Shown here: positions 6,889 through 42,007 of the stretch, piece after piece
Layout: the number at the start of each line of letters is the position of its first letter
How positions within the stretch are numbered: the first letter of the stretch is position 1
Assembly: GCF_037042905.1 (NCBI RefSeq)
Contig: NC_087247.1
Location: 4,653,196-4,714,000, forward strand
DNA length: 60,805 nt
Reading direction: 5' to 3'
DNA from: Lytechinus pictus
Taxonomy: Eukaryota
Made by a program: the position numbers and the translations under genes
Notes under the pieces: generated by a model
The model's database searches: none
Seen by the model: the letters and a program-made list of their open reading frames with translations, nothing else
Told to the model about the DNA's origin: nothing

Positions 6889-9047
6889 ATGTTCCCAGTT
6901 TGTGATGACGATGCGGCACGGTGTGTCCCGGCCGCTGAGTTCTTTGGAGATGTGATGAAACTTAGCAGAGACGTTACAGGTAAGCTGTACAGTTCCAGAC
7001 ATTCCGTAAATGATAAATCTTTGATTTCTTTCTCTTTTCAACTTTATTTTGTTATCTCCCCCCTTCTAACTCCTTCAAAATTCATCATATTAAAAGTTCT
7101 TTTAAGTTTGTTCATAATATTATATATGCATTCCTTCATTTTCTTCATGATATTAAATATACAAAATTGATTAAATTCATTTTGTGCGGATGGCATTTCA
7201 ATTGCAAATTCGTATTTTTCATTTCCATGAAGAAAAGATACTTAGCCATTCATGGTTCATACATCGTATAGTTGCATTACTGAAACAATATATAGATTAG
7301 TTTATGAACATAAACAATTTCCACAAACATTAGCAGATCATTAGCAGATGATACTGTCATGACTGTGAAAGAATATAATTGAATTGTTTCCCAATTAACT
7401 AGTATGAAATAGTGACTTTTCAAAACATCTTATCTTTATACAAGAAAGACGATATCTTCATTTTCCGAATCGATTCATGAATAACGATTGTTGATGTTGA
7501 TCAGAACAAGTTCAAATAGTTTAATAAGTTATTCCTTATTGAAATAAAATTAGCCTGTTCAATCTTAGGAACGTAATATTACTTAACTTATAATAGGCCA
7601 AACGCCTTCCGTGTGCACGCAAGGCGAATATACTAAAGTAATCTTTTTTCAAAACAATGAATTTCTGCAGGGCGTTTACCCAACTACCATCCCCCCGACT
7701 CAACCAGTACAACCTCGCACACGGCGTCGCATCACCACCACCACCATCACTGCGACGCGGCCAGTGACCACGTGACTTCTCCCCACCACGGAGCAGGCGC
7801 CACGAACGAGGAAGAAATGAACGCACTGAGGCACAGGCGGCGCCGCAGTCGTACCATATACACACGGCTGCAGCTAGAGAGCCTGGAGCAGGTTTTCAGG
7901 AAGAATAAATACCCAGATATAAACTCAAGAGAAGCGCTAGCTGATGCCATCGATCTCACCGAAGCCAGAGTTCAGGTAATTATAAGATTTATTTTTATAT
8001 GTCATGATTAATAATCCCTTCTATCTTTCAATTCCATCTACTCGAAAGTGGTGAATTTCATATCCTTTCGAATTTCTTATATTATTTTGTCATATATCAT
8101 AAACTGACAGTATATTTGTATAAAAAAAAATAGAACAAGCTTAAAGCTATATTACTTGTGATAGCTATTCTTTAAGGAAAGTCTTAAACTTTAACCCCAA
8201 GACTTATTATTATTATTTACAGTCACAGTATTTTCTTTCAGTCTCAAAATATCTGTATGAATTACATACTAGCAGTTCATTGTCCGTAAGAAATTGTTTA
8301 CTGCATTTGATTATTATGGATATCCATTTTTTCTACCATCAATGAATAATATTTCCGTTATTACAAAATTACTTTCTTCTAACCAAGCCTTTACTTAATT
8401 CTATCTCGTTACAGGTATGGTTCCAAAATCGTCGGGCACGGGAAAGACGGCAAGAACGTTCAGGGAAGAGCTCTCCGGATAGTCGTCAAAGTCCGACCTA
8501 CCGACAACAAGCATCTGACTTCAGGAGCGACAGCCAATATTACCACGAGATCATCGGCGAAGCCGCTGGTCGTTTGATGAACAAGACCGATGGCAGTCAA
8601 AGAATCAAGCAAGAACTCGATTGGAGCTCTGGCGTAAAAACGTCGAAGGTTTCCCCTCTTATGTCCATTGAGTTTTTATCAAAGAGTAGCCGCGATGAAG
8701 CTGATTCCTCCGCAAAGACTACCCAGTCTCTCCATCAAGGTTATAAATACAACCACAAACAGAAACACCAACTGAAACAACTCTCTTCTTTTCAATCATC
8801 ACCGGATCTCTACGCCAGGTCCACTCTTCATGCCAACGTCAAAGACATTTCTGCTTCAGGACACAGCCCGATGGCACGACATCATTCCCCGTCTCTACAT
8901 GTTGACGTTGCGGACGTCGACGGTGACTACCAGAAACTGTCATCACACCCTTATTACCCGACCACCGAGACTTCGCTGAAGTATGCTTACTATCTTGGAG
9001 TTCCTCTTGTATCTTTCCAACCGATGAATTGCAAAGACGCCCACTAA
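6889..9047 (+). CDS. phb1: PRD-class Q50 homeodomain transcriptional repressor, Pmar1/Micro1/Phb family (probably Phb1), ~342 aa, 3 exons
   Basis: Exons 6889-6979 (alternative start ATG 6955), 7671-7975 and 8415-9047, all GT-AG and in frame. Homeodomain [46 protein letters not shown]|[14 protein letters not shown], with the PRD-class intron between residues 46 and 47. His7 tract; eh1-like motif [12 protein letters not shown]. The homeobox call is firm; the symbol is from recall of the family and is less certain (~0.6). Confidence 0.88.
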
Positions 9048-11629: not shown

Positions 11630-11839
11630 TTTATTGAAGGAAACCTTCCGCAATAACAAGCTTTGCCTTTCAGAAGGTTTATATTTAATTTCATTACGTT
11701 ATATTATGATTCGCTTTAATTTGTAACTTTGTTGAAATTTTGATGTGAAAATAAATTCGTTATCAATCAATCAATTAAATTGAATTGAATTGAAATGAAA
11801 ACAAACCAACTTTGTGCATTAGAGGGCGTAATATCCAAG

Positions 11840-14800
11840 ATGGCAGCGCCCATGAATGATCATGCCACCAGTGCGATGCCATCAGAGACAGCAGAAAAGG
11901 ACGAAAGAACTGAATCCAGCCAATCAAATATAGACAAAAGAAGCTGGAATGAAAGGAGAAAACACTTAAATTGTATTGAAAGGGCAGATTTTGCTTGCAA
12001 ACACAGTAAGTTGTTTTATTTTTATAGTGAGCCAGTGGCAGTGCAACGCCTCCCGAAACCACAGTTCCGGGCTTCCCTCCACGCCGGCGCGGCCCCGCTG
12101 CGCTGTGCCCCACCGCTTGGCGCTCACTCATTCCACCATCGCTCACCCATTCCCTACCTCGAGCGAAGTTCGTGCAGGCTCCACTTCACTACCGCTACAC
12201 TAGGTGGAGCATAGTGTAGCGATAGTGAAGTGGAGTGGAGCCTGCATGAACTTCGCTTCAGGTAACCCATTCCCTAGACAGGAATAACCGTCGTTTCTGG
12301 GGATTTATTCAACAATTTCTGACATTTTACTGTAATCCCCATTTACCTATGTATTGGTGAGTGGAGCCAACGTAGTTCAGCGGAACAACCAAAATACAGA
12401 GACTGAAGCTTTTGGTCTACCCATTCCCCTGCTGCATTGTCATTGACATGATTGACTTTACATTAGTCTTGTCTTTTCTTGCTCTGCCTTTTGAAGGCTT
12501 TTCTCCTTTTCCTTTGGCCACAATCAATTATCATGCATTGGCACTTGAAACCGGGATTTGTGTTTGCTTACAAATTTTGTCTTGTCTTTTACTCTCATGA
12601 CATGAGAATTTGAGATGAGACATGACTGCCTAGCTAAAGTCGTTAATAATTAATAGTCATGATAGCAGAATAAAAGTAATTATAAATTGATCTATAGTTA
12701 GGCTTATTTTAGAATTATAATAATATATCTCAGCATTTCTTATGTTGTTTATATTTATTCCAGATCCTTATGTAAAATTCATGCTTGTTGCCATGGAACA
12801 AATTGGATGGTAAGTGGAAAACATTTAAACATTTTGTGGGTCAAGATTAAGAATGATAATTGTGATAATAATCTATATATTGACAGAATATGTTAAATTA
12901 CTTAATGCAGGAAACAACAGAAGGTATGATTAAGAGTAAAATGAAGATTGAATGATGCTTAAATAAATTATAATTTTAATGTGTTACATTTTCATTAAAG
13001 TATTATTGCATTTCAGTTGAGTTTTTAATTATGCTAATAAATTATGAAATGTTCAGTTCAATTCAATGCAATTTATTCATTTTTTCAGCATAAAAAAACA
13101 TTATGAATGATAAAATAAAAAAACAGAAACCTCAGAAATTTATAAAAACTTGGAGTAGCAGGTCCCAGTAAATTACAAAAAAAATACATCTTGACAGCAT
13201 TAAATCAGAATAATTATCCGAAATTGAATAAAATTGTATCTGAAACAATTGATCAATCAATGGTAGTCTCTAACACTTGCTTGCTAAATTATTGCTAGTA
13301 CTGTTACTAACTACAAGTACTGTGAAAGCCTACAAAGTACAAAAGGCATATTCTTTATCACAAATATCAGTATGCAGTGTGTAAAATAGAATGTGGTTCA
13401 ATACCATAGGACTGACTTGAGTAATCCAAGTACATTGTTTTCAGAAAAGAAAATAAAATCTTGTTCTATATTTTTTGTTGGAGCGAAGTTTTGGAATAGT
13501 TTGCCCCAGAGTATTCGAGAGAAAAGAACACGGTTTTCATTTCGTAAAAATCTGAAAAATCACTTGATTAATGAAGTTTGATGATTAATATGTGTTTGAA
13601 ATGAAAAAATAAAAATAAAAATCAGAGAAAGTTGTTTTAGTAGAGTAGATACATTGCACTTTGATCCTTTTGGGGGAACCATTCTTGACTAGCACTTGTG
13701 CTAACTTTTGGTTCTCCCTTTAACAGCTTTTCGTTTGTACAAAATCACCCATACCATTTACAATTTATGTTCATGCATACGATCAATTTTTATGGTGATT
13801 TGCTTCTTGTCAGGTGAAACTGCATCAAGACAAACCACATGATGTTACTCTTTTGTATTATGCTGATATCACATGTGGTATCATATTATGCTTTTATATA
13901 GACTATGCTTATGTTATGTTATAAATTGCATTTATATGATTCATATTAACACATTCTTGTAAATATGTTAATGTTGTTAATAAACTCAACTCATATACTT
14001 TATGCTTATTTTGATGGTTGCACAAAATGTTTCAAAGTAATATCGGTATAATGAAATCACTACATATGGAAGTAAAAGGTTTCTGTGCTATTCATCTTGT
14101 AAATCTATCATTATCACTGTCTATCCTTTTGTTTGTAAAAGATTGTTCATGGGTCATGAGTGTAAATAAACAGATAATAAAATCAGATGAGAGTCATTTT
14201 TATGAGTTTTCATCATTTGTCTTTATTTTGACATAATAAACTGGCAGGAATACCTGTATAAAATGAAAGTTAAAAAAAATAAGAAAAAAAAAATCAAAAA
14301 AATCTTTGTTTCTCTTTGTTTCAGCCCAGTGGATCTAGATACACACATAGTGTGTGAGCCGTGTGCTAGTGACAGTCCTGTCAATGGAGGCTTTGATCCC
14401 GTTAATGGTCAGGTGAATGGACTGAATAGTTTGTCATAACAAATTTCTTATGATATTATGATTCATATATTGATGTGATGTCTGATGAAATGTCTTTTGT
14501 CCTAATTAAGTAAATCAATTAAATTAAATGAAAGTTTCAGTCATTCTTTCTTGATTTATGAAGTTTTAATTTTTTTTAATAAGACATGTCTCTTACTCTC
14601 TTGATTTTGTAGAGGTAACATGGATTTTAAGCATAAAAGCAGGCTTGCATAACATATTCATTTTTTGACAATATAAAAATTCTGAAATATGGGGTGTTTC
14701 ATAAAGCTTTTCGTAGAATTACGCACAACTTTATGCCCAACTGGAACACGTTCTTAGGTCATAACTCAATTACACAGGGATATCACATAGCACAAGAAAG

Positions 14801-17378
14801 GTTCACCAGTTGTGCATAAAGTCATTCGTATCTTACGAACAGCTTTATGACACACCCACCAGGATGGCTTTGTATCCCACACCTACCTTTGATAAGTGTT
14901 ATGGTGATTCAATGGAAGTTTGAAAGATTTTTTCATGCTAAGTGTCTTTTTTGTGTGAATCTTGGGGTTCTTTCACAAAAATTTAATAAAATGTGACTAT
15001 AAATGACACTTTACTTCAGTTTTATGTGGTAAAGTATGTATTGCATTACAGCATTGGTCAGATCATGCACAGGTGACACACGCAACCGCATATCCATCAA
15101 TGGGAGGGTCCACATGCGTGTTAGTGCCTGAGCATGACTTGATGTCACACTTAAATCTTTGTGAAAAACCACCCTGGTGATGTATGTCAGGAAAGCACTG
15201 GGGGTGTTTCACAAAATAGAGTTAAGAATGACTTTAGAGTGGCACTTAAATATCCAGTTGCATGCAGAATAAAAGGCATCACCGCATGGGTCAAATCATG
15301 CCAAGAGGACGCATGCTACTTGTGTATTAACACAGAGCATGACTTTAAGTCATACATAACTCTCTGTGAACCCCCTCGTCTGGGGGCCGTTTCATAAAGC
15401 TGATCGTAAGTTAAGAGCGACTTTAAGAACGACTGGTGATCCTTTCCTACGTGCTAAATAATCACCAATGAACATTTAATGGCAAATACCATTTACCACG
15501 AGAAAGAATCACCAGTCGTTCTTAAAGTCGCTCTTAACTTACGAACAGCTTTATGAAACGGCCCCCGGTTCTCTTAAATTAAAAACACACTATGCACAAG
15601 TGCCCTTTGGAAGGGTATCTATTCTCATTATTAGGTCCCTCATGGACAATGAAATCTACCAGTCTATATTTGTCAGAAATCAAGTTAAACTCAATCCCTC
15701 ATAAAATCAATCTTTATTATATTTTGCAGATTGTTTTATGTGAAAACAAGAGCCCTTCCCAAAGAATATTGAGTACGCTTCTCACCCACGAGCTGATACA
15801 TGCGTACGATCACTGTAGAGCCAAAGTGGACTGGACGGATATAAGACATGTTGCTTGTTCAGAGGTAAAAAACATACTCCAGTAATTTTCAGTAGAGATT
15901 AGAACTGTAGTAAAACAATGTTAACTATATTACAACTTAACTGATTATGATAACCATGATAATATTGATAATTTTTAGGTTAAAAGTAAAAGTGGTGGAA
16001 CCAGGATGTTGATGGCATAAAAAGAGCGTTTTTTATTAAATGGAGGAGATGCAGACGACTGTTTTTTTAGACTTAATTTGATATGTATGTTTTAAATCTC
16101 AAAATATAGAGGGGGCATGCGCATCCTTTGCGCCTGCTATTGGGTGCACCACTGATGGTAATATATTTGCGTACAGCTCATGGCAACTCATCATTGCACT
16201 TCAGAAGCAACAGACTCTAGATACTAATTCCATCATTAGCTCCAGACTGCCTTTGGTATCAACAAAGACAAAAATATCTTGAGTTTCATCATGAGAAAAA
16301 TGTCAAGAATGTAGCTTTTCCCATTCTCTGCATTTTCGAGAAATGTTGTTATTTTGACTTTAAGACAAATGAATTTGGGAAAAATTTCCAAATTCATTGA
16401 GTTTATACATTGCCATCTGCACATCTTTTGAAAAATGAAAATTTGAAAGAAGATTTTACTAGTAATTAGTACTTACATGTGACTTCTTTATTTCTATTTA
16501 AATGTTTTGATTTTTATATGCGATGTTATTTCATTTTTATTTGTATTTGTTTATAGATAAGAGCTTCCAGTTTGAGTGGTGATTGTTCTTTCTTGAGTGA
16601 TAGTCTTTACAGCTGGAACTTCAGATTTAAGAATCATCATCAGGTACATTGTAGTAGACACCAGAGAGTTGTTTCACTGAAAGGGTTAAAGGGAAAGTTC
16701 ACCCAATTTGGTGTGGATAAAATTGGATAAAAGCAGAAAGAAAAGTAAGAGAAACATGTTAATGAAGATTAGTGAAGAAGCACATATATGTGCAAGTTGT
16801 CTAAAATTATTTATCAAATGATGCTGAAATTATGGTATCTGCAATTTTTTTTTCATAGGGATCTATTCAACTATGCCCATTCTTAGGTGGCAACAGGCAT
16901 CTTTAATGTTAAATTTTGCCTGTTACCAACGGACCTAATTTGTTGTTTTGGAGTCGTGGTTTAAGACATGACCCCACTTTTAGACCAATCAGACAAGTGG
17001 ATAATTCAGTATTCTGAAAGAGAGGTGTAAACATGGTTACTAATTTTATGTTGATAATATTGTGCAGCACTTTTAAATCTTTCTTTAAAAGCAAGATGTA
17101 AGTATGATGTTTATTATTGTCATTTGGAGTATAATTACTGTTATCATTTTGTTTTATCTATGTTGTAGACTTGTGTGAAGAGAAGAGCTATTGGTTCCAT
17201 ATTGGCGGTCAGGGACGTTTCTCGAGAGGTTGCAGAGAAAGCCGTCGATGATGTCTGGGAGACATGCTTCAAAGACTATGCACCTTTCACCTGTATACCA
17301 AGGAGACCAGCTGACCTGAAATCAGCATCACATGATCAATCACATGACCAGAAAACTGCTTTTCCACCAAAAAGATAA
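11840..17378 (+). CDS. ATP23: Mitochondrial inner membrane protease ATP23 homolog (peptidase M76), ~243 aa, 6 exons
   Basis: Exons 11840-12005, 12764-12809, 14325-14412, 15730-15864, 16557-16643, 17169-17378, phase-consistent GT-AG. Motifs NPYVKFML..GC, CEPC...GGFDP, IVLCEN, THELIHAYDHCR (HExxH), HVACSEIRASSLSGDC, HHQTCVKRRA, CFKDYAPF. Confidence 0.95.
12155..12264. mobile_element. 110-bp fully palindromic mini-transposon with 10-bp TSD (AcademH-like)
   Basis: TACC...GGTA near-perfect ~50 bp stem, flanked by ACCCATTCCC at 12145-12154 and 12265-12274. Confidence 0.75.
12275..12419. mobile_element. 145-bp TAGAC...GTCTA mini-transposon with 9-bp TSD (AcademH-like), copy 1
   Basis: TSD CCCATTCCC at 12266-12274 and 12420-12428; a near-identical copy at 41525-41673 has a different 9-bp TSD. 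Confidence 0.85.
13393..13760 (+). mobile_element. 3' remnant of CR1/L2-type LINE
   Basis: Translation FVGAKFWNSLPQSIREKRTRFSFRKNLKNHLI is typical of the ORF2 C-terminus; followed by a 3' UTR-like stem (ggggaacca...tggttctccc). Confidence 0.65.
14691..15565. mobile_element. Cluster of palindromic GGGG(T/C)(G/C)TTTCA-type MITEs (Harbinger-like)
   Basis: Clearest copy 15383-15565 (GGGGCCGTTTCATAAAGCTG...CAGCTTTATGAAACGGCCCC, flanks CTG/CGG); related copies at ~14691-14860 and ~15200-15376. Confidence 0.7.
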
Positions 17379-24075: not shown

Positions 24076-24382
24076 GCTTTCTCTATCATGTTAAAACATC
24101 ACCACCATTTACTGTAAAGAATTGTTAAAATAACAAATTTATTATCAGCCAATCAGATTGAAGGATTTCAGTAGCTTTTAAACTGTTATTGCGAATTTGT
24201 TATTACAACAAGTCCTATGAAACAGGCCCCAGGTATGGCGTGCCTATGGTACAATCTTTGTAGAATAGATTTTACGTCTCAGTATGCATGTCAAGAGCTC
24301 AGGAGGATACACGAATGGGGGCCCGTTACAAACAACTCAAACAGTAACTCCCACAGAATCCTTGGTTTTGATTGGAGCATTG

Positions 24383-24560
24383 TGCTGCACTCAACCCAGT
24401 TGAGGTGAATATGTACCCGGCAGGAATAATTCCTTGAATGCATGAGCACTGAAAGGCAGCTCGAGCTAAAGCCAGGGTAATAATAATAATAACAACATGC
24501 CTCGGAATAGAATATTTCTAGATAGATGGCGCTATATAAATGCATATTATTATTATTATC
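24383..24560 (+). mobile_element. SINE/LINE 3' tail fragment ending in (TAT)n
   Basis: gcactcaacccag...gcgctatataaatgcatattattattattat; similar tails at ~33430-33650 and ~59010-59200. Confidence 0.55.
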
Positions 24561-24619
24561 AATGGCAAATTAGAATTGCTACTATGGTAGTTACCACTGA
24601 TGGTGAAAATACAAAAATA

Positions 24620-25160
24620 ATAACTTTTATATCGTACATAGATTGAATCCTGTATAGTGATTGGTTCAAATAGCATCACGTGACCATCTATATTTCTACT
24701 ATGATGTTGCGTGACGTCAGACCTCGATATATTTTTCGCTATACCAATATTCTGACGTCATTATTTCAGAAAACTGGATATTTAGCTAAACTCTCGGGCG
24801 CACCGGCCAGCTCTCTCTCTCTCCCGGGCAAGTCCCGTGATGCGTCGGCGCAGGCACTAATCTGCGTTTGGCTGAGCGCTGTGGCTCAGAGAAAAGTAGG
24901 TAATTCAACGCAAGTAACCGGACTTTGCAAGCTCAACGCATAGATTTTGGTTGTAAATTATTAAAAGTAGGATATAAAACAAATATACCAGGCGTTTCAT
25001 TCGAAAGCATAGTGGGAATTATTAATCCTCGGTTGGACTGGCAAAACTACTATATTTCCCTCGGGGCTTCGCCCCTCCAGAAAAATAGTAATTGCCAGAT
25101 CAACCTCGGATAAATAATTCCACTATACTTTCTCAAAGCCTGATATATTTGTTTATTATG
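24620..25160. mobile_element. Putative non-autonomous element (Crypton-like appearance)
   Basis: tgattgg...cacgtgacc near one end, a CpG-rich core, and a hairpin ggggcttcgcccc near the other end. Family assignment is by resemblance only. Confidence 0.35.
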
Positions 25161-25719
25161 CAACAGGCACTAGGTCTCGTGAGTTGAATTGGTTAGCACT
25201 ACACTGCTACATTGCATGACTTATTTCATTTAAGCTGTGCACCCTAAATGTGTATGAGCTGTTTCCATTGTTCAATATACCTTTCAAAATAAAGGTGCAA
25301 TTTTGATTAATGTATTCACTTAACTACTATTTCTTAGAATTTAACAATACCCTTGACTTGGAATTCTTGGGGTGTTTCACAATGGCTTTACAGTGACTTG
25401 AAATCATACGTAAATCATCTTTTGCATGCGGTGTCTGGTCACTGGGGAATCTTGCAAAGAGAGTTGGAATCAAACTTAACTCCAGAAATCAATCAAAGCT
25501 TGAATTTCAACCGATCCAACGCACAAATTTGGGACTTGCGGTTGATTGTCTTTTTTAAGTCGAGTTTAAACATATCTATTTCTGCAATTGGCCCAGACCA
25601 TGTTCAAGGAAAGTATACATCCATAAAATTCACCGTTTGGCATCAATCACAAATTTAAGCACAACTTTAAGTCACACTTAATTCTTGTGAAACAGCCCCC
25701 TGAATCATGACCCTTGACC

Positions 25720-28700
25720 TCAGTCTATGCAGTCTGCTATGTGGATGTTGAGAGTGTCGTAATCGGGGAACGTCAGTTGGCACTTGGGGCACCAGTTTGC
25801 TGTGGTAGCCTGTTGGGGCTGAAAAGGTAACAGATGAATGCATTGAGAGTATTGAAAGAAGTCAGAATAATTCACGACGAAGCAACAACAAAGTATGGAA
25901 TTTGTGGTTCACACGTCTGCCATCTAGAAGATTAGTGTAGAGTTAAATTGGGGGAAGGCATTTTGGGATAATTCCCTCTCCACCCACCCCCCCCCCCCCG
26001 AAAAAGAGAGGAAAAACTTGGGTAAAACAGAAAGCAAGTATTACAGATACAATTGCTATATTATAACCAGTTCATGACAAAGCAATGGCATTTTGGGGAA
26101 AGCCCAATGACTAAAGATACAGAACCCTTCCTATAATTTTATTTTATTTTTTTACAAAAATGACAATGCAATCCAAACATAAAATTGCTCTTTTTCCATG
26201 CAAAGGTGGCAAATTCTCATCATTCTCAATACATTTCAGTTATATATACTTAAACAAGTAAACCATAGTAATGAAGAAAGAAAAATCACATTTGTTGCCA
26301 ATAGCGTAAATAAGTCTTCAAATTATGCATTGTCATAACAAGTAATAGAGTGAACAATGAGAAGCCCAAATGCAGGGGACCTTCCAAACTCGAAAGGAAT
26401 TGCCGTTGATAGACTTACCGTTCGCAGCTCTTGGGGCTGATATGTTTCTTGGAATCGATCGACATTCCCTGCTTCGTCTTCACCGGGAGCTTCGTAAACA
26501 TGGCGTCTCATGCCAAACATCTCCCCACCCCCTATGGGTAAAGGGAAATATGTGGAGTACAATCAAAACTCATTCATGAAATCATTCAATAGTGATTTCA
26601 GTTAAGTCCCTTTTTTTTCATTATTTCATGCATTTGATATGTAGAAGTCTACATTTTCAAACCAACATAAATCGCGGTAGAATTATACAGGTCTCTAAAT
26701 TTGATTCATATAAGTGCCCACAGAAATTGTGGCAGGATTATACAGGTTCATTATTGAGATATCAAACGTCCTTAGTTTTAAAACCAAATTGGTAACTTTT
26801 CATCTTTGAGATGAAGTGCATGTACCTTTATGACTTTTGTAAAAGCAACGCCAATTTTGTAGATTCAAATAACCAATTCATGGTGTAGCTATCAAACACA
26901 TGAAAATCTTGCACACTGACATACCCATCTCCACTCCCTAGGGTGTATGTCCATCAATCAGCTTTTGCCATCCCTATGGACCCCTCTTTCTCCAGTAACC
27001 TCATGAACATGGTGTAGCTATCAAACACATGAAAATCTTGCACACTGACATACTCATCTCCACTCCCTGGGGAGTATGGTCATCAATCTGCTTTTGCCAT
27101 CCCTATGGACCCTCTTTCTCCACCTCGTGAAAATGGTGTAGCTATGAAACATGAAAATCTTGCACACTGATAAACTTATCTCCACTCCCTGGGGAGTATG
27201 GTCATCAATCTGCTTTTGCCATCCATATGGACCCCTCTTTCTCCACCTCGTGAACATGGTGTAGCTATGAAACATGAAAATCTTGCACACTGACATACTT
27301 ATCTCCACTCCCTGGGGAGTAATGCCATCAATCTGCTTTTGCCATCCATATGGACCCCTCTTTCTCCAGTGACCTCTTGAAAAAGAAGTAGCGTATGAAT
27401 TTACATCCCTCAGACCTATCTCTACACTCGCTAAAACCCACAACATTAATTCAATTGCTTTTATTCAACTACACGATTATGACACGATCACGCATATAAA
27501 AGTACAGATTAAACCTACCTCTCCTATCATAACCAAAGCCTGTCGTCGGCCCATACGCAGTCCCCGCCACGGCATGCAGCTGTTCCCGGTGGAAGTCTTG
27601 GAGTTCGCTCTCCATCTTCTTGTTCTCCCGCAGTAAGTTTTCAATCTTAGCCTGCAGTTCACCCTTCTCTGTGTGCATGTTTTCCCTCGCTTTACGCTCA
27701 GCCTTGAAATCATCCTTGCACACCTCCATCTAATTTTCAAAGTTTAATTTTAATCAATGTTTACATTTATGCTTGTATTTTTCATGTTATGTATGTGTAT
27801 TCACCCCCAAATGTTGGGGGGCTCCCAACAAATGGTCTTATTTCTTTCTCTGTCTCTCTTCTTATGTATATGTATGCACCAGCTAATGATGTGGAGAGCC
27901 TTCCAACAGAATTTCCTGTTTCTTTTACATGATCCTCAGGCATTGGTTGGTGTGCAAAGTAACTCTCTTTATTTTTGCGTCAACCATGTGATTTTTCTAT
28001 TGTATTTTGTTATCATCTTGACTGGATATAAAATAATTAATTAAAAAATAACATCTGTTTGTTTTGAAAAATTTGAAATAATCGGCAGCAAAGCAATTAT
28101 CGAACAATGTTCTGATCTTTGATTGGTGCGTTTGGGGTCTTCATGAAGATTGTAATGTCAAGCCATTGCTTTTGTAGGCAAACTGGCTAACCCCAGAAGG
28201 ATAATAAAAGGAATTTGATTTGATGAAAAAGGGGGATAGAAAGAAGCAGTTCTAGAAGAAAAATATTTGTTTTAATCTTTTGTGGTGATCCTCAAATTAG
28301 CAATGCTGCTTTAAAATGGTTTTTGTGGAGACTTCTTCTTCATGTAACTTAATTTGACATTTGACACATTATCAAATTTGAATAAAACTACATATTATTC
28401 CAGATAATACTCAGAATAAATCAAATTAAAGAAATTTCAGACACTTTGTGCATTATTGCTGAGCTTTCGAAGAGAAACAAAGTATCAAAATTATCAATGA
28501 TACAAATTTGAAAACCACATTATCGTATTACATCAATCAAAATAAATGAATTTCATATCCATACTAATAATAAATACATACTAATTCAAATAGAATGAAG
28601 TTTCTGACACAAAATACAATTGAAGACATTATACTGACCTGTTCTTTCCAAATGTGTCTTTCATTGTCATATTTCTTAGCCAGCTGCTCAAACTTCAACT

Positions 28701-38896: not shown

Positions 38897-39862
38897 TTTA
38901 AGGATTGGAAAATGTGTCATTAGTAGCTTCTATCCAGATCATTACTATCATACAGGAATGTCCCGAAACTAATCTGATGTGAAATATAAAATCAACCTGA
39001 TAGTACCGGTATCCAAATCTGACCATCTTCAAACTCAAGTGGAAGTGTCATATGAAATTAATGACAGAATAGATATTTACAGAGAAATTTATGAAAGCAC
39101 ATCGATCTCATTAGATATTCTAGCAATATTCTTGTCAAGAGACAAAAGTTAGGCCTAATCTACTATTGACAGTCGGATCGGCTGGCAACCAAGGAAAAAA
39201 GAGAGCCCTACAAAAATGGTAAAATAGTTTACTAGTGATTTGTTTATTTTCAAACTTTTCCCACAGAAAATACATGTTTGGAATAACAGTGAGGATCTCC
39301 CTGGTAATACAATACAATTTTCAAGTGACCAAAACACTTCACTGAAAGCCGATGTCATAAAAAAATATAAATTATTCTATTCAGATGGGATTTGCAAAAA
39401 AAAAATCATCTTGACTTCAAGCTACTTCTTAAGACAAGGATACATGTACAGGTAGGTTTGCGGAGGGGCTTCGTAGAACATCTCGAAGCAGTACCAGTAG
39501 CACCAGGGCGGCCCAGAGCAACAGCGTGTGAAACCTCCGCCTTGTGCTCTGGGACTGGGCCACTCAAGGGTTCATTACCATCCTGCCTGTGGGGAATCTA
39601 GGTAGGACTATGGTATGCCAATGCTGTACACAGCACACAATTTAAAAAATCATTAAAATATCACTTTTGTGACCAAAAATACTAATTTCCATACAATTGA
39701 TTTTATTTTTCATTAGTAACTTAGGAGTAATTTTTGTATTCACCAGAGTGCTTGAAAACTTGAATTTTGGGCATATTTTTGTGTACGCCCTCTATTGGTG
39801 CAAAGTATGGCAGTGAGTCCAAACTTCACGTGTGTCTATACTTCGCGGACGGTCATTTATCT

Positions 39863-40818
39863 AAACAAGTGGAATACCTCTGGCGGTCTCACCTGCATCA
39901 CGCGATTCAATATAGAAGCAGTGCTGACTTTGAAAACTACATAACTCGCACAAGATGTTTAGTGATACTTGGTTACTCTTATGTCCACGTTTTATGAACT
40001 AGACCAATGAATACACTTACAGAGATATGATGGTAATTCAACAAATACCCCCAACATGGCCAAAGTTCATTGACCTTACATGAACTTTGACCTTGAACAT
40101 GTGACCTAAAACTCGCACAGGATGTTCAGTGATACTTGATTACTCTTATGTCCAAGTTTCATGAGTCAGATCCATAAACTTTCAAAGTTATGATGGTAAT
40201 TCAACAGATACCCCCATTATGGCCAAAGTTCATTGACCTTTGACCTTGGTCATGTGACCTGAAATGTGCACAGGATGTTCAGTGATACTTGATTACTCTT
40301 ATGTCCAAGTTTTATGAACTAGACCAATATACTTTCAAAGTTATGATGGTAATTCAACAAATACCCCCAATTCGGCCAAAGTTCATTGACCCTAAATGAC
40401 ATTTTACCTTGGTCATATGACGTGAAACTCATGCAGGATGTTCAGTGATACTTGATTAATCTTATGTCCAAGTTTCATGAACAAGGTCCATATATTTTCT
40501 AAATTGATGACATTTAAAAAACTTAACCTTAGGTTAAGATTTTGATGTTGATTCCCCCAACATGGTCTAAGTTCATTGACCCTAAAAGGCCTAGGCTAAA
40601 TGACCTTTGACCGTGGTCATGTGACATGAAACTCAGGCAGGATGTTCAATAATACTTGATTAACCTTATGGCCAAGTTTGATGAAATAGGTCCATATACT
40701 TTCTAAGTTATGCTGTCATTTCAAAAACTTAACCTTCGGCTAAGATTTGGTGTTGACGCCGCCGCCGTCGGAAAAGTGGCGCCTATAGTCTCACTCTGCT
40801 ATGCAGGTGAGACAAAAA
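39863..40818 (-). mobile_element. Helentron-associated non-autonomous element (HINE/DINE-1-like) with internal ~160-bp tandem repeats
   Basis: Sub-terminal inverted repeats GTCTCACCTGCAT (39886-39898) / ATGCAGGTGAGAC (40801-40813), adjacent short IR GTCTCAC 40788-40794, (GCC)n microsatellite, five repeats containing gatgttcagtgatacttg and tgacctttgacc, A-run flanks. Confidence 0.75.
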
Positions 40819-41524
40819 CTAGCCAATATCCTTAAAATCTGAAATCAACGTAAAAAGCGACCTAAAATTACCCTTTGACTTAATTTTCTATAGGATGAGT
40901 TCAGTATTCATGAAAATATTGACAAAAGATCAGCAAATTTGTCACCGTTAGCGCCCGTTCCAAAGAAATCTGAAATTGTCAACAAGCAGCACGATATCAT
41001 CAGTTTGCAAGCAGATATCATAAAAAATGTGAGTTCAATGTGGCTGTTTCTCTAGCATTTTATCGTCAATCTGATATAAATATCTCACCTTTTGAGCTTG
41101 AGTTTTTAATCTCCACAAAAACTTTGGTCCGCGAAGTTAGGTCACACCTTTTCAGAACGGTTTTCCAACACAGCGCGCATTCGTCGATCAGAATAGAATT
41201 TTGAGATCGCGATACCGGCGAAGCCCCTTGATCTACTTCACATTTTCCTCAATGATTTTACAGTTAACGATCTTGCCGTCAATGTGGTAACTATTTCTTG
41301 AATTGGTTTTGTATATTGTGAATAATTTGTGAACAAATTTAAGCCCGATATATATTTTTGAAAAGTCCGCGAAGTTTGGACACCCCATCATAATATGGCA
41401 AGACAATTGTCAATTTTCAATCTCTATAATTAAGAAAAAATAATTTAAAGAATCAAATTTACCTAAGTCTAGAGCCAAGTTATATGATGAATAGCTGTAT
41501 GGAAACCGACAGTGTCAAAAAATC

Positions 41525-41673
41525 TAGACAGGAATAACCGTCGTTTCTGGGGATTTATTCAACAATTTCTGACATTTTACTATAATCCCCATTCATATGT
41601 ATTTACTATTGGTGAGTGAGCCAACGCAGTTCAGCGGAACAACCAAAATACAGAGACTGAAGCTTTTGGTCTA
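41525..41673. mobile_element. TAGAC...GTCTA mini-transposon with 9-bp TSD (AcademH-like), copy 2
   Basis: TSD CAAAAAATC at 41516-41524 and 41674-41682; the opposite arm of the large inverted repeat shows the empty site. Confidence 0.85.
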
Positions 41674-42007
41674 CAAAAAATCAAGCATTTATCCCAAAGA
41701 AAAAGAGAAAATAAGCCAAACATTGCCAACCATATTTCACCACACAGCCACAGGGAGTAGTAACAGAGAACAAGGACAGGTTATATCATAATTTCATTAG
41801 GCCTAAACCTTGTTCATAGAATGAGTGGGACTGGGCCACTCACACTAATACGAGGTTAGTATATGTATACATGACTGGGCTGGCTCACTCATCCTACGTC
41901 TACGAACGAGGTCTGGCTCAGCTCTGCATGATCTGGGACTCTGCTCTTAAGTTGAATAATGAATGGCTAAAATTAGTTTACAGCCCGATACGATATTTCA
42001 AACTTAC

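What the first reader, a model, noticed from the sequence alone, without database searches (positions are those of the whole stretch)
12145..12428. Two unrelated mini-transposons stacked at one site: repeat-element-repeat-element-repeat array
Seen: CCCATTCCC occurs three times (12146, 12266, 12420). The copies separate a 110-bp hairpin element (TACC...GGTA) and a 145-bp TAGAC...GTCTA element that share no internal similarity. The second element recurs at 41525 with its own 9-bp TSD, which shows it is mobile and that the repeats are TSDs. Known: TA(G)...(C)TA termini with 9-10 bp TSDs characterise AcademH DNA transposons. Inference: the transposase re-targets the flank of an existing element and re-duplicates the same target. 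This would build an ordered, CRISPR-like array of different elements, i.e. a self-targeting safe-harbour mechanism.
Basis: partly seen in the sequence, partly recalled or inferred. Interest (0 to 1): 0.75.

Follow-up and report, generated by a model that had tools for sequence, protein, structure and literature searches.

The report
Two mini-transposons stacked in one target
Two unrelated miniature jumping genes landed one after the other in exactly the same 9-10-base spot inside the first intron of the sea-urchin ATP23 gene, each copying the target once more; this "double insertion" is real and cleanly documented but is a known by-product of cut-and-paste transposition, not a CRISPR-like array system.

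Summary
CCCATTCCC stands at 12146, 12266 and 12420. The copies separate a 110-bp palindromic element, E1 (12155-12264), from a 145-bp TAGAC...GTCTA element, E2 (12275-12419). E2 recurs at 41525 with its own 9-bp duplication. One correction: E1's duplication is more likely 10 bp (ACCCATTCCC), E2's is 9 bp.

Both are separate, abundant, dispersed repeat families in Lytechinus pictus and its sister species. The orthologous site in L. variegatus is empty and carries the target once. So the triple repeat was made by two successive insertions in the L. pictus lineage. The site is intron 1 of ATP23, 140 bp past the exon-1 donor.

Sister-species contigs hold at least three E2-E2 tandems spaced by 9 (one possibly 10) bp, and E2 abutting E1 elsewhere, so stacking recurs.

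This is the "double insertion" already described for fly P elements, R1 and casposons. The scan has also reported it on other DNA of this genome (s1-324926, s1-323346 and others).

AcademH membership fits by duplication length only. The autonomous partner was not tested. Nothing supports an ordered, CRISPR-like or safe-harbour system. Site preference and guidance by the resident element's end could not be told apart.

Verdict: a new member of a known kind, of low to moderate interest.

The parts
12145..12154 (+). Target copy 1 (ACCCATTCCC): left duplication of E1
   Evidence: The target is present once at the empty site in L. variegatus.
12155..12264 (.). E1: 110-bp palindromic (foldback) miniature transposon, TACC...GGTA ends
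   Evidence: Inverted arms 89-96% complementary. Fold -46.2 kcal/mol, z = -13.4. Summed contig depth is hundreds of times the unique flanks in both species. About 40 contigs per sister-species run break into unrelated sequence exactly at 12155.
12265..12274 (+). Target copy 2: right duplication of E1 (10 bp); its last 9 bp are the left duplication of E2
12275..12419 (+). E2: 145-bp non-autonomous TAGAC...GTCTA element with asymmetric ends and a 5-bp terminal inverted repeat
   Evidence: Second copy at 41525. Summed depth is thousands of times the flanks. Loose ends lie exactly at 12275 and 12419 with unrelated flanks in all four runs.
12420..12428 (+). Target copy 3 (CCCATTCCC): right duplication of E2
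41516..41682 (+). Solo E2 copy (41525-41673) with its own 9-bp duplication CAAAAAATC on both sides
   Evidence: It lies in a 2.45-kb block with no counterpart in L. variegatus.
11840..12005 (+). Context: coding exon 1 of ATP23 (Peptidase_M76). The donor GT is at 12006, so the stack lies in intron 1, 140 bp downstream.
   Evidence: Gene call 11840-17378 in window coordinates. ORF and donor read. A transcript-like contig stops exactly at 12005.

Best explanation
This is a sequential double insertion. Two non-autonomous cut-and-paste DNA transposons of different families both cut their target with a 9-10-base stagger. They inserted one after the other into the same target, ACCCATTCCC, in intron 1 of ATP23. 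This happened in the Lytechinus pictus lineage after its split from L. variegatus.

The first insertion duplicated the target, leaving an intact copy on each side. The second element then cut one of those copies again at the same position. The cut is identical on one strand. On the other strand it is the same or one base off, depending on whether E1's duplication is 9 or 10 bp. That second cut duplicated the target a third time.

Shown here: two independent families, an empty ancestral-type site, an exact duplication-length junction, and recurrence of such junctions elsewhere.

Inferred: the order of the two events is unknown. The cause of the re-use is taken to be ordinary insertion-site preference, both local sequence (G/C at the ends of the duplication) and a permissive promoter-proximal region. 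Both elements are probably moved by the same kind of transposase, possibly AcademH. I put about 0.85 on double insertion as such, about 0.55-0.6 on site preference as its main cause, and about 0.5 on AcademH as the superfamily.
For: -: E2 and E1 are separate high-copy families in both species. Contigs break into unrelated flanks exactly at 12275 and 12419 (E2) and at 12155 (E1).
- a solo E2 copy has a different 9-bp duplication.
- the orthologous L. variegatus site (L002 about 25575-25605) has the target once and neither element. BLAST finds no E1 or E2 anywhere in L002.
- an independent sister-species contig (X1 record 7) runs from the right flank into 55 letters unlike E2. It carries the same 9-bp deletion at 12442 as L002.
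-, table 5c: three single-copy-depth contigs hold E2 end to E2 start. The intervening letters plus aligned flank bases give 9 bp in two cases (AACAAATAC, CTGCTCCTG) and 9 or 10 in the third (ATTAGTACC).
-, table 5: the joint 12419->12154 shows an E2 end abutting an E1 start at other loci (1 contig in X4, 2 in X1).
- a C precedes TAGAC in about 40% of X4 ends (55 loose ends at 12274 against 83 at 12275). This and the observed duplications point to a weak G/C preference at the duplication ends.
- the mechanism is documented for P elements, R1, hobo and casposons.
Against: - No one-element allele at this locus was seen, so the two-step history is inferred, not observed.
- The L. pictus runs offered behaved like RNA: a contig stops at the exon-1 donor. 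No population DNA was examined.
- No independent contig was shown bridging the E1-target-E2 junction.
- The target preference seen is weak (about 1-2 bits). By itself it would predict few exact re-uses, so something more may contribute, such as regional preference, local hopping or attraction to resident ends.
- No genome-wide count against a null was possible.
- E1's right boundary, and so whether its duplication is 9 or 10 bp, rests on symmetry of the ends.
Confidence: 0.8

Rival explanations
1. Resident-end-guided re-targeting, the strong form of the reader's idea. Transposase bound to the end of a resident element positions the incoming transposition complex so that it cuts the adjacent duplication again. 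This is the opposite of target immunity. Stacks would then be a built-in property of this transposon group rather than a by-product of site preference.
For: - Stacking is frequent. One of two E2 copies in this window is stacked.
- Among the few rows the tool printed, at least three E2-9bp-E2 tandems and E2-E1 joints appear in the sister species.
- In X1 the consensus behind E2's end reads nine letters and then TAGAC (table 7).
- Several further stacks have been noted in this genome (unchecked).
- Two different families, one with a 10-bp and one with a 9-bp stagger, hit the same spot.
- The visible target preference is weak.
Against: - The same facts follow from site plus regional preference, as shown for P elements.
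- The site is promoter-proximal, and L. variegatus has an unrelated insertion about 15 bp away, which points to a generally permissive spot.
- If E1's duplication is 10 bp, one cut is a base off the resident end in one order of events.
- No count against a null was made, and there is no biochemical evidence.
Confidence: 0.2
2. One composite element: E1, an internal CCCATTCCC and E2 form a single mobile unit that moved here as a whole.
For: E1 and E2 are adjacent elsewhere in the sister species (joint 12419->12154). They share a 10-mer.
Against: - E2 exists alone with its own duplication.
- Contigs of both families break at the inner boundaries 12275 and 12155.
- The other adjacency is in the opposite order.
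- A composite would not carry an internal spacer identical to the new target's duplication, a chance of about 4^-9.
Confidence: 0.02
3. No transposition-linked duplication: a pre-existing triple motif, or slippage or unequal exchange between short repeats, produced the pattern.
For: Unequal exchange between flanking duplications could in principle make same-element tandems such as the E2-E2 dimers.
Against: - The sister species has the motif once.
- The two units between the repeats are unrelated sequences, which duplication by slippage or unequal exchange cannot produce.
Confidence: 0.02
4. Assembly artefact: two repeat copies were wrongly joined at a shared short word.
For: No independent contig was shown that bridges 12264-12275. 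L004 is the same assembly as the window.
Against: - Independent L. pictus contigs match 12396-12793 perfectly across the E2-duplication-flank junction (records 14 and 22).
- The structure has exactly the form expected of transposition.
- The same architecture recurs in another species' contigs.
Confidence: 0.02

Closest known systems
Double (multiple) insertion of transposable elements into one target: P element, hobo and R1 dimers in Drosophila (McGurk & Barbash 2018, PMC5932611)
   Same: The tandem junction holds exactly one duplication-length copy of the target. This is explained by a second insertion into the target copy preserved by the first. Such dimers are frequent in families with insertion preference and arise during active transposition.
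   Different: Here the two elements belong to different non-autonomous families. The staggers are 10 and 9 bases rather than 8. The host is a sea urchin, and the superfamily is probably a little-studied one.
Tandem casposons separated only by a shared target duplication (Krupovic et al. 2016, PMC4779613); Tn7 pile-ups at attTn7
   Same: The same target is used twice, giving element-duplication-element arrays.
   Different: Casposons and Tn7 are sequence-specific, with one defined site per genome. The elements here use many different targets (CAAAAAATC, AACAAATAC, CTGCTCCTG and others).
AcademH lineage of Academ DNA transposons (Kojima 2020, as cited in PMC10045372)
   Same: It makes 9 or 10 bp target duplications. 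Earlier notes of this scan report helicase-carrying AcademH elements in this genome (unchecked).
   Different: The elements here encode nothing. No link by shared ends to an autonomous AcademH copy was tested here.
Mutator-like elements (MULEs) and their MITEs
   Same: They make 9-10 bp duplications and prefer the 5' ends of genes (established knowledge). PMC10045372 gives 4-10 bp for MuDR/IS256.
   Different: E2 has only a 5-bp terminal inverted repeat and TA ends, unlike typical long-TIR MULEs. No MULE transposase link was tested.
IS30-type targeting of resident inverted repeats and IS dimers in bacteria (Dalrymple 1987, as cited in PMC5932611)
   Same: Dimers carry a duplication-length spacer. 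This is a precedent for an element end attracting a new insertion.
   Different: The system is prokaryotic with a 2-bp spacer. The mechanism is shown biochemically there and not here.

Membership tests
Non-autonomous DNA transposon (MITE), E2 | Short, non-coding, with defined ends, flanked by a target duplication, and many dispersed copies with unrelated flanks | tested here: met
   145 bp. Two window copies have different 9-bp duplications. Hundreds of contigs per run break at 12275 and 12419 into unrelated sequence.
Non-autonomous DNA transposon (MITE), E1 | Terminal inverted repeats, a target duplication, dispersed copies and an empty site | tested here: met
   It is a 110-bp palindrome with a 10-bp duplication. 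About 40 contigs per sister-species run break at 12155. It is absent from the orthologous site. Only one copy with readable flanks was seen, so the family's duplication length is not established.
Double insertion (tandem with target duplication in the junction) | The junction between the elements equals one duplication-length copy of the target, identical to the outer duplications | tested here: met
   ACCCATTCCC / ACCCATTCCC / CCCATTCCC.
Double insertion (tandem with target duplication in the junction) | The unoccupied site carries the target once | tested here: met
   L. variegatus L002 about 25575-25605 has a single ACCCATT... copy with no E1 or E2. X1 record 7 agrees.
Double insertion (tandem with target duplication in the junction) | Recurs in the family more often than random insertion allows | tested here: inconclusive
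   At least three E2-9bp-E2 junctions and E2-E1 joints appear among the printed rows. Random expectation per end is of the order of 1e-5 to 1e-4 (my estimate). No full census or permutation null was possible.
AcademH | Target duplications of 9 or 10 bp | tested here: met
   9 bp for E2 (two copies) and 10 (or 9) bp for E1. The definition comes from PMC10045372.
AcademH | Ends shared with an autonomous element that encodes a DDE transposase and a helicase | not testable with these tools
   No autonomous copy lies in the window, and no route to the rest of the genome was available. Earlier notes s1-317485 and s1-324989 assert such elements but were not checked here.
   Both elements begin and end with TA. 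Whether this defines AcademH could not be verified, because PMC7165386 is not held.
Mutator-like (MULE) | 9-11 bp duplications together with long terminal inverted repeats | tested here: inconclusive
   The duplication length fits. E2 has only a 5-bp inverted repeat, while E1 is all inverted repeat. No transposase link was tested.
Site-specific array builders (casposon, Tn7 or CRISPR-like) | One defined target sequence used throughout the genome | tested here: not met
   Duplications differ: CCCATTCCC, CAAAAAATC, AACAAATAC, CTGCTCCTG, ATTAGTACC. The other CCCATTCCC sites in the window are unoccupied.
Site-specific array builders (casposon, Tn7 or CRISPR-like) | Polarised, ordered addition at one end | not testable with these tools
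   The order of the two insertions cannot be read. Both copies differ from their family majority by about 2% (table 3).

The most novel reading that the evidence does not exclude
The transposase that moves these TA-ended, 9-10-bp-duplication elements (perhaps the helicase-carrying AcademH type) is actively drawn to the ends of resident elements of its own group and re-cuts their flanking duplication. This would be a eukaryotic 'anti-immunity' that builds mixed, in-register stacks and confines new insertions to sites already proven harmless.
Probability: 0.15. Interest if true: 0.55.

Novelty: new member of a known kind. Interest (0 to 1): 0.25.

Why it matters
This is a clean, dated example of double insertion that involves two different mini-transposon families. 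It comes with an empty site in the sister species and sits next to the first exon of a gene.

It shows that both families were active in the L. pictus lineage after the species split. It also suggests that they share target rules, and perhaps a transposase; a shared 10-mer is a weak hint of this.

If the high frequency of such stacks in Lytechinus holds up against a proper null, the group would be a good system for two questions. One is how a 9-10-base-stagger transposase chooses targets. The other is how transposon dimers seed tandem repeats.

As a single locus it changes nothing about known mechanisms.

Tried and rejected
- **Scans for E2's conserved 5' 20-mer.** The metagenome scan gave one chance bacterial hit (L001) and the viral scan gave nothing. 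These collections hold no urchin DNA, so no census was possible.
- **Orthologue of the solo E2 copy at 41525.** The whole 2.45-kb block around it is missing in L. variegatus, so no empty site was obtained for that copy.
- **Second L. pictus haplotype.** P0002 is not on record. P0001 returned the window's own assembly, identical over 19,047 bases.
- **The L. pictus runs offered (X10, X11).** They behave like RNA: a contig ends at the exon-1 donor at 12005, and intronic depth is low. They gave no DNA polymorphism data and no bridge over the E1-E2 junction.
- **The AcademH primary paper.** PMC7165386 is not held. A further literature search for Academ in sea urchins mostly matched the word 'Academy'.
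- **E1 or E2 copies in 56 kb of L. variegatus** (L002, L003): none found.
- **The other three CCCATTCCC sites in the window.** Their contexts are unrelated and carry no insertions.
- **Copy numbers.** Summed contig depths suggest thousands of E2 and hundreds of E1 copies. The tool warns that depth is not copy number, so these are orders of magnitude only.
- **Rejected readings.** A composite element, slippage or unequal exchange, and an assembly artefact were considered and rejected (see rival explanations).

Full report
**Observation**

The window is from the painted sea urchin Lytechinus pictus (earlier notes). The record is GCA_037042905.1 CM073228.1.

CCCATTCCC stands on the + strand at 12146, 12266 and 12420. 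The window holds six matches against 0.22 expected. The other three are in unrelated, unoccupied contexts. Among all 9-mers of the window this is the only complex, non-tandem one that occurs three times within 300 bp. The rest are low-complexity words or a 123-bp tandem repeat.

**The two elements**

E1 is 12155-12264, 110 bp, TACC...GGTA.
- It is a near-perfect palindrome, with arms 89-96% complementary.
- As single-stranded DNA it folds at -46.2 kcal/mol, z = -13.4.

E2 is 12275-12419, 145 bp, TAGAC...GTCTA.
- It has only a 5-bp terminal inverted repeat and otherwise asymmetric ends.
- A second copy lies at 41525-41673, 92.7% identical.
- In the alignment, similarity begins and ends exactly at TAGAC and GTCTA. 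That copy is flanked by CAAAAAATC on both sides.

- An A at 12265 separates E1 from the middle repeat. With symmetric ends, E1's duplication is therefore 10 bp (ACCCATTCCC at 12145 and 12265), while E2's is 9 bp. If instead the A belongs to E1, both duplications are 9 bp.
- E1 and E2 share one 10-mer, GAGTGGAGCC. About 1% of shuffles and 0.4% of random window segments reach this. It is a weak hint of a common protein-binding site and nothing more.

**Both elements are independent, dispersed families**

I laid Logan contigs of four runs on 11700-12900.

Organism A (X1, X4) is L. variegatus or very close. Its contig carries the same 9-bp deletion at 12442 as the L. variegatus assembly.

Organism B (X10, X11) is L. 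pictus, but its runs behave like RNA. A contig matches 11830-12005 perfectly and then departs exactly at the exon-1 donor.

In all four runs the summed depth over E2 is thousands of times that of the flanks. Over E1 it is hundreds of times. The tool warns that this is not a copy number, so I read it as orders of magnitude only.

The positions of the loose ends matter more than the depth.
- Contigs break into mutually unrelated sequence (agreement 0.36-0.42) exactly at 12275 and 12419 for E2. The counts are 16-84 and 37-102 contigs per run.
- Contigs break at 12155 for E1, with 41-43 contigs in each sister-species run.

So the inner boundaries next to the middle repeat are true element ends. 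Both families exist in both species.

**Empty site in the sister species**

The neighbouring paired-like homeobox gene (P0001) has an L. variegatus orthologue, P0003. Its locus, L002, covers the orthologous region.
- Window 11788-12113 aligns to L002 23284-23630.
- Window 12423-13458 aligns to L002 25587-26632.

Just left of 25587 the L. variegatus sequence reads ...cgtcgctcACCCATTATTCTCCTCctgcattgtc.... This aligns to the L. pictus left flank, one target copy and the right flank, with a 3-bp indel and two substitutions. Neither E1 nor E2 is there, nor anywhere else in L002.

An independent sister-species contig (X1 record 7) likewise runs from the right flank into 55 letters unlike E2.

The triple repeat is therefore not ancestral. 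It was created together with the two insertions in the L. pictus lineage. Both copies differ from their family majority at only about 2% of positions (table 3). The flanks differ by about 16% between the species, so the insertions are young.

A composite that moved as a unit cannot explain an internal spacer identical to the outer duplications. Slippage or unequal exchange cannot place two unrelated sequences between the repeats. Two successive insertions into one target remain.

**Geometry**

If E1's duplication is 10 bp and E2's is 9 bp, both events cut the bottom strand at the same bond, after the last C. They cut the top strand one base apart.
- If E2 came first, E1's second cut fell exactly on E2's left junction.
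- If E1 came first, E2 cut one base from E1's end.

The order cannot be read from the sequence.

**Recurrence**

Table 5c lists three sister-species contigs of single-copy depth (about 95, against flanks of 73-91). In each, an E2 3' end is followed by an E2 5' start.
- Adding the printed intervening letters to the aligned flank bases gives spacers of 9 bp in two cases (AACAAATAC, CTGCTCCTG).
- In the third case the spacer is 9 or 10 bp (ATTAGTACC, with the terminal A changed or lost).

Table 5 also lists a joint from E2's last base back to the base before E1 (12419->12154). It occurs in one X4 contig and two X1 contigs. So E2 is followed by E1 at other loci, in the opposite order to this locus; the spacing is not given. 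Because L. variegatus lacks the insertions at this locus, these are independent events.

In X1 the consensus of the sequence behind E2's end reads nine letters and then TAGAC.

Only a fraction of the rows was printed, so I cannot give a frequency. For random insertion I estimate an in-register neighbour at 1e-5 to 1e-4 per end, which is far below what these few rows imply.

The scan's notes list the same architecture on other DNA of this genome. Two were followed up with the same conclusion (s1-324926, s1-323346). Three are first-reader notes only (s1-322131, s1-317572, s1-324963). These are unchecked AI notes. I use them as agreement, not as support.

**Context**

The annotated ATP23 gene (Peptidase_M76) spans 11840-17378 in window coordinates. 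Exon 1 ends at 12005 with GTAAGT at 12006. The stack therefore lies in intron 1, 140 bp from the donor, in a GC-rich promoter-proximal stretch.

In L. variegatus an unrelated 1.9-kb insertion that contains a LINE fragment sits about 15 bp upstream of the empty target. The spot seems generally permissive.

**Mechanism and what is known**

Re-use of a target that the first insertion has duplicated is described as 'double insertion'. In Drosophila most P-element tandem junctions contain exactly the 8-bp duplication, and the authors conclude that insertion-site preference drives it. R1 and hobo behave likewise (PMC5932611; review PMC12628747). Casposons also occur as tandem pairs separated only by a shared duplication (PMC4779613).

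Here a weak preference is visible. A C precedes TAGAC in about 40% of X4 ends (55 loose ends at 12274 against 83 at 12275). All five oriented duplications end in C or G.

That preference is weak, so regional preference or attraction to resident ends may add to it. I could not separate these causes.

**Superfamily**

AcademH makes 9 or 10 bp duplications (PMC10045372), which fits. Mutator-type elements fit by length as well. The primary AcademH paper is not held, and no autonomous copy lies in the window. Earlier notes report helicase-carrying AcademH elements in this genome, one with TAGAC ends, but I did not test them.

**Verdict**

The stacking interpretation is right in substance. The AcademH assignment is plausible but open. 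The 'CRISPR-like, self-targeting safe-harbour' reading has no support: targets differ from copy to copy and no polarity or function is shown.

This is a new member of a known kind and has been found before by this scan on other DNA. This follow-up adds the sister-species empty site, the mixed-family 10/9-bp geometry and the independent recurrence in L. variegatus contigs.

Noticed in passing
window 26879-27368: Tandem repeat of a 123-bp unit, 3.9 copies, 92% matches.
   Followed up: partly
window 39541-41993 vs L003 17917-18016: A 2.45-kb block at the NEMO/OPTN promoter region has only about 100 bp of counterpart in L. variegatus. The block holds the solo E2 copy and part of a large inverted repeat. 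It is either a lineage-specific insertion or a deletion in the sister species.
   Followed up: partly
L002 23690-25570: L. variegatus carries a lineage-specific insertion of about 1.9 kb only about 15 bp upstream of the empty E1/E2 target. It holds a LINE ORF2 C-terminal zinc-knuckle fragment near 24900-25150 and a roughly 500-bp unit bounded by G and C runs at 24140-24630. The spot appears to attract insertions of several kinds.
   Followed up: no
window 12233-12242, 12359-12368 (and 12177-12186 on the - strand, one mismatch): E1 and E2 share the 10-mer GAGTGGAGCC, which occurs nowhere else in the window. About 1% of shuffles reach this. It is possibly a shared transposase-binding motif.
   Followed up: partly
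Read laying on window 11700-12900, table 5c (X1, joint 12419->12223): In the sister species an E2 3' end abuts the centre of an E1-like palindrome, with 28 letters between that resemble E1's loop. E2 also appears to insert inside E1-type hairpins.
   Followed up: no
window 12347 and 12353-12355: Many family contigs diverge from this E2 copy at these internal points into shared sequences. E2 is therefore an internal-deletion derivative of longer relatives, some of which have an inverted copy of the right subterminal region.
   Followed up: no
window 6889-9047 (+): Two-exon paired-like homeobox gene (P0001, named 'ceh-36-like'). Exon 2 is about 90% identical to its L. variegatus orthologue P0003.
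   Followed up: partly
window 11830-12005: Contigs of the runs X10 and X11 stop exactly at the ATP23 exon-1 donor and continue in unlike sequence. These runs of unknown kind are most likely RNA.
   Followed up: partly
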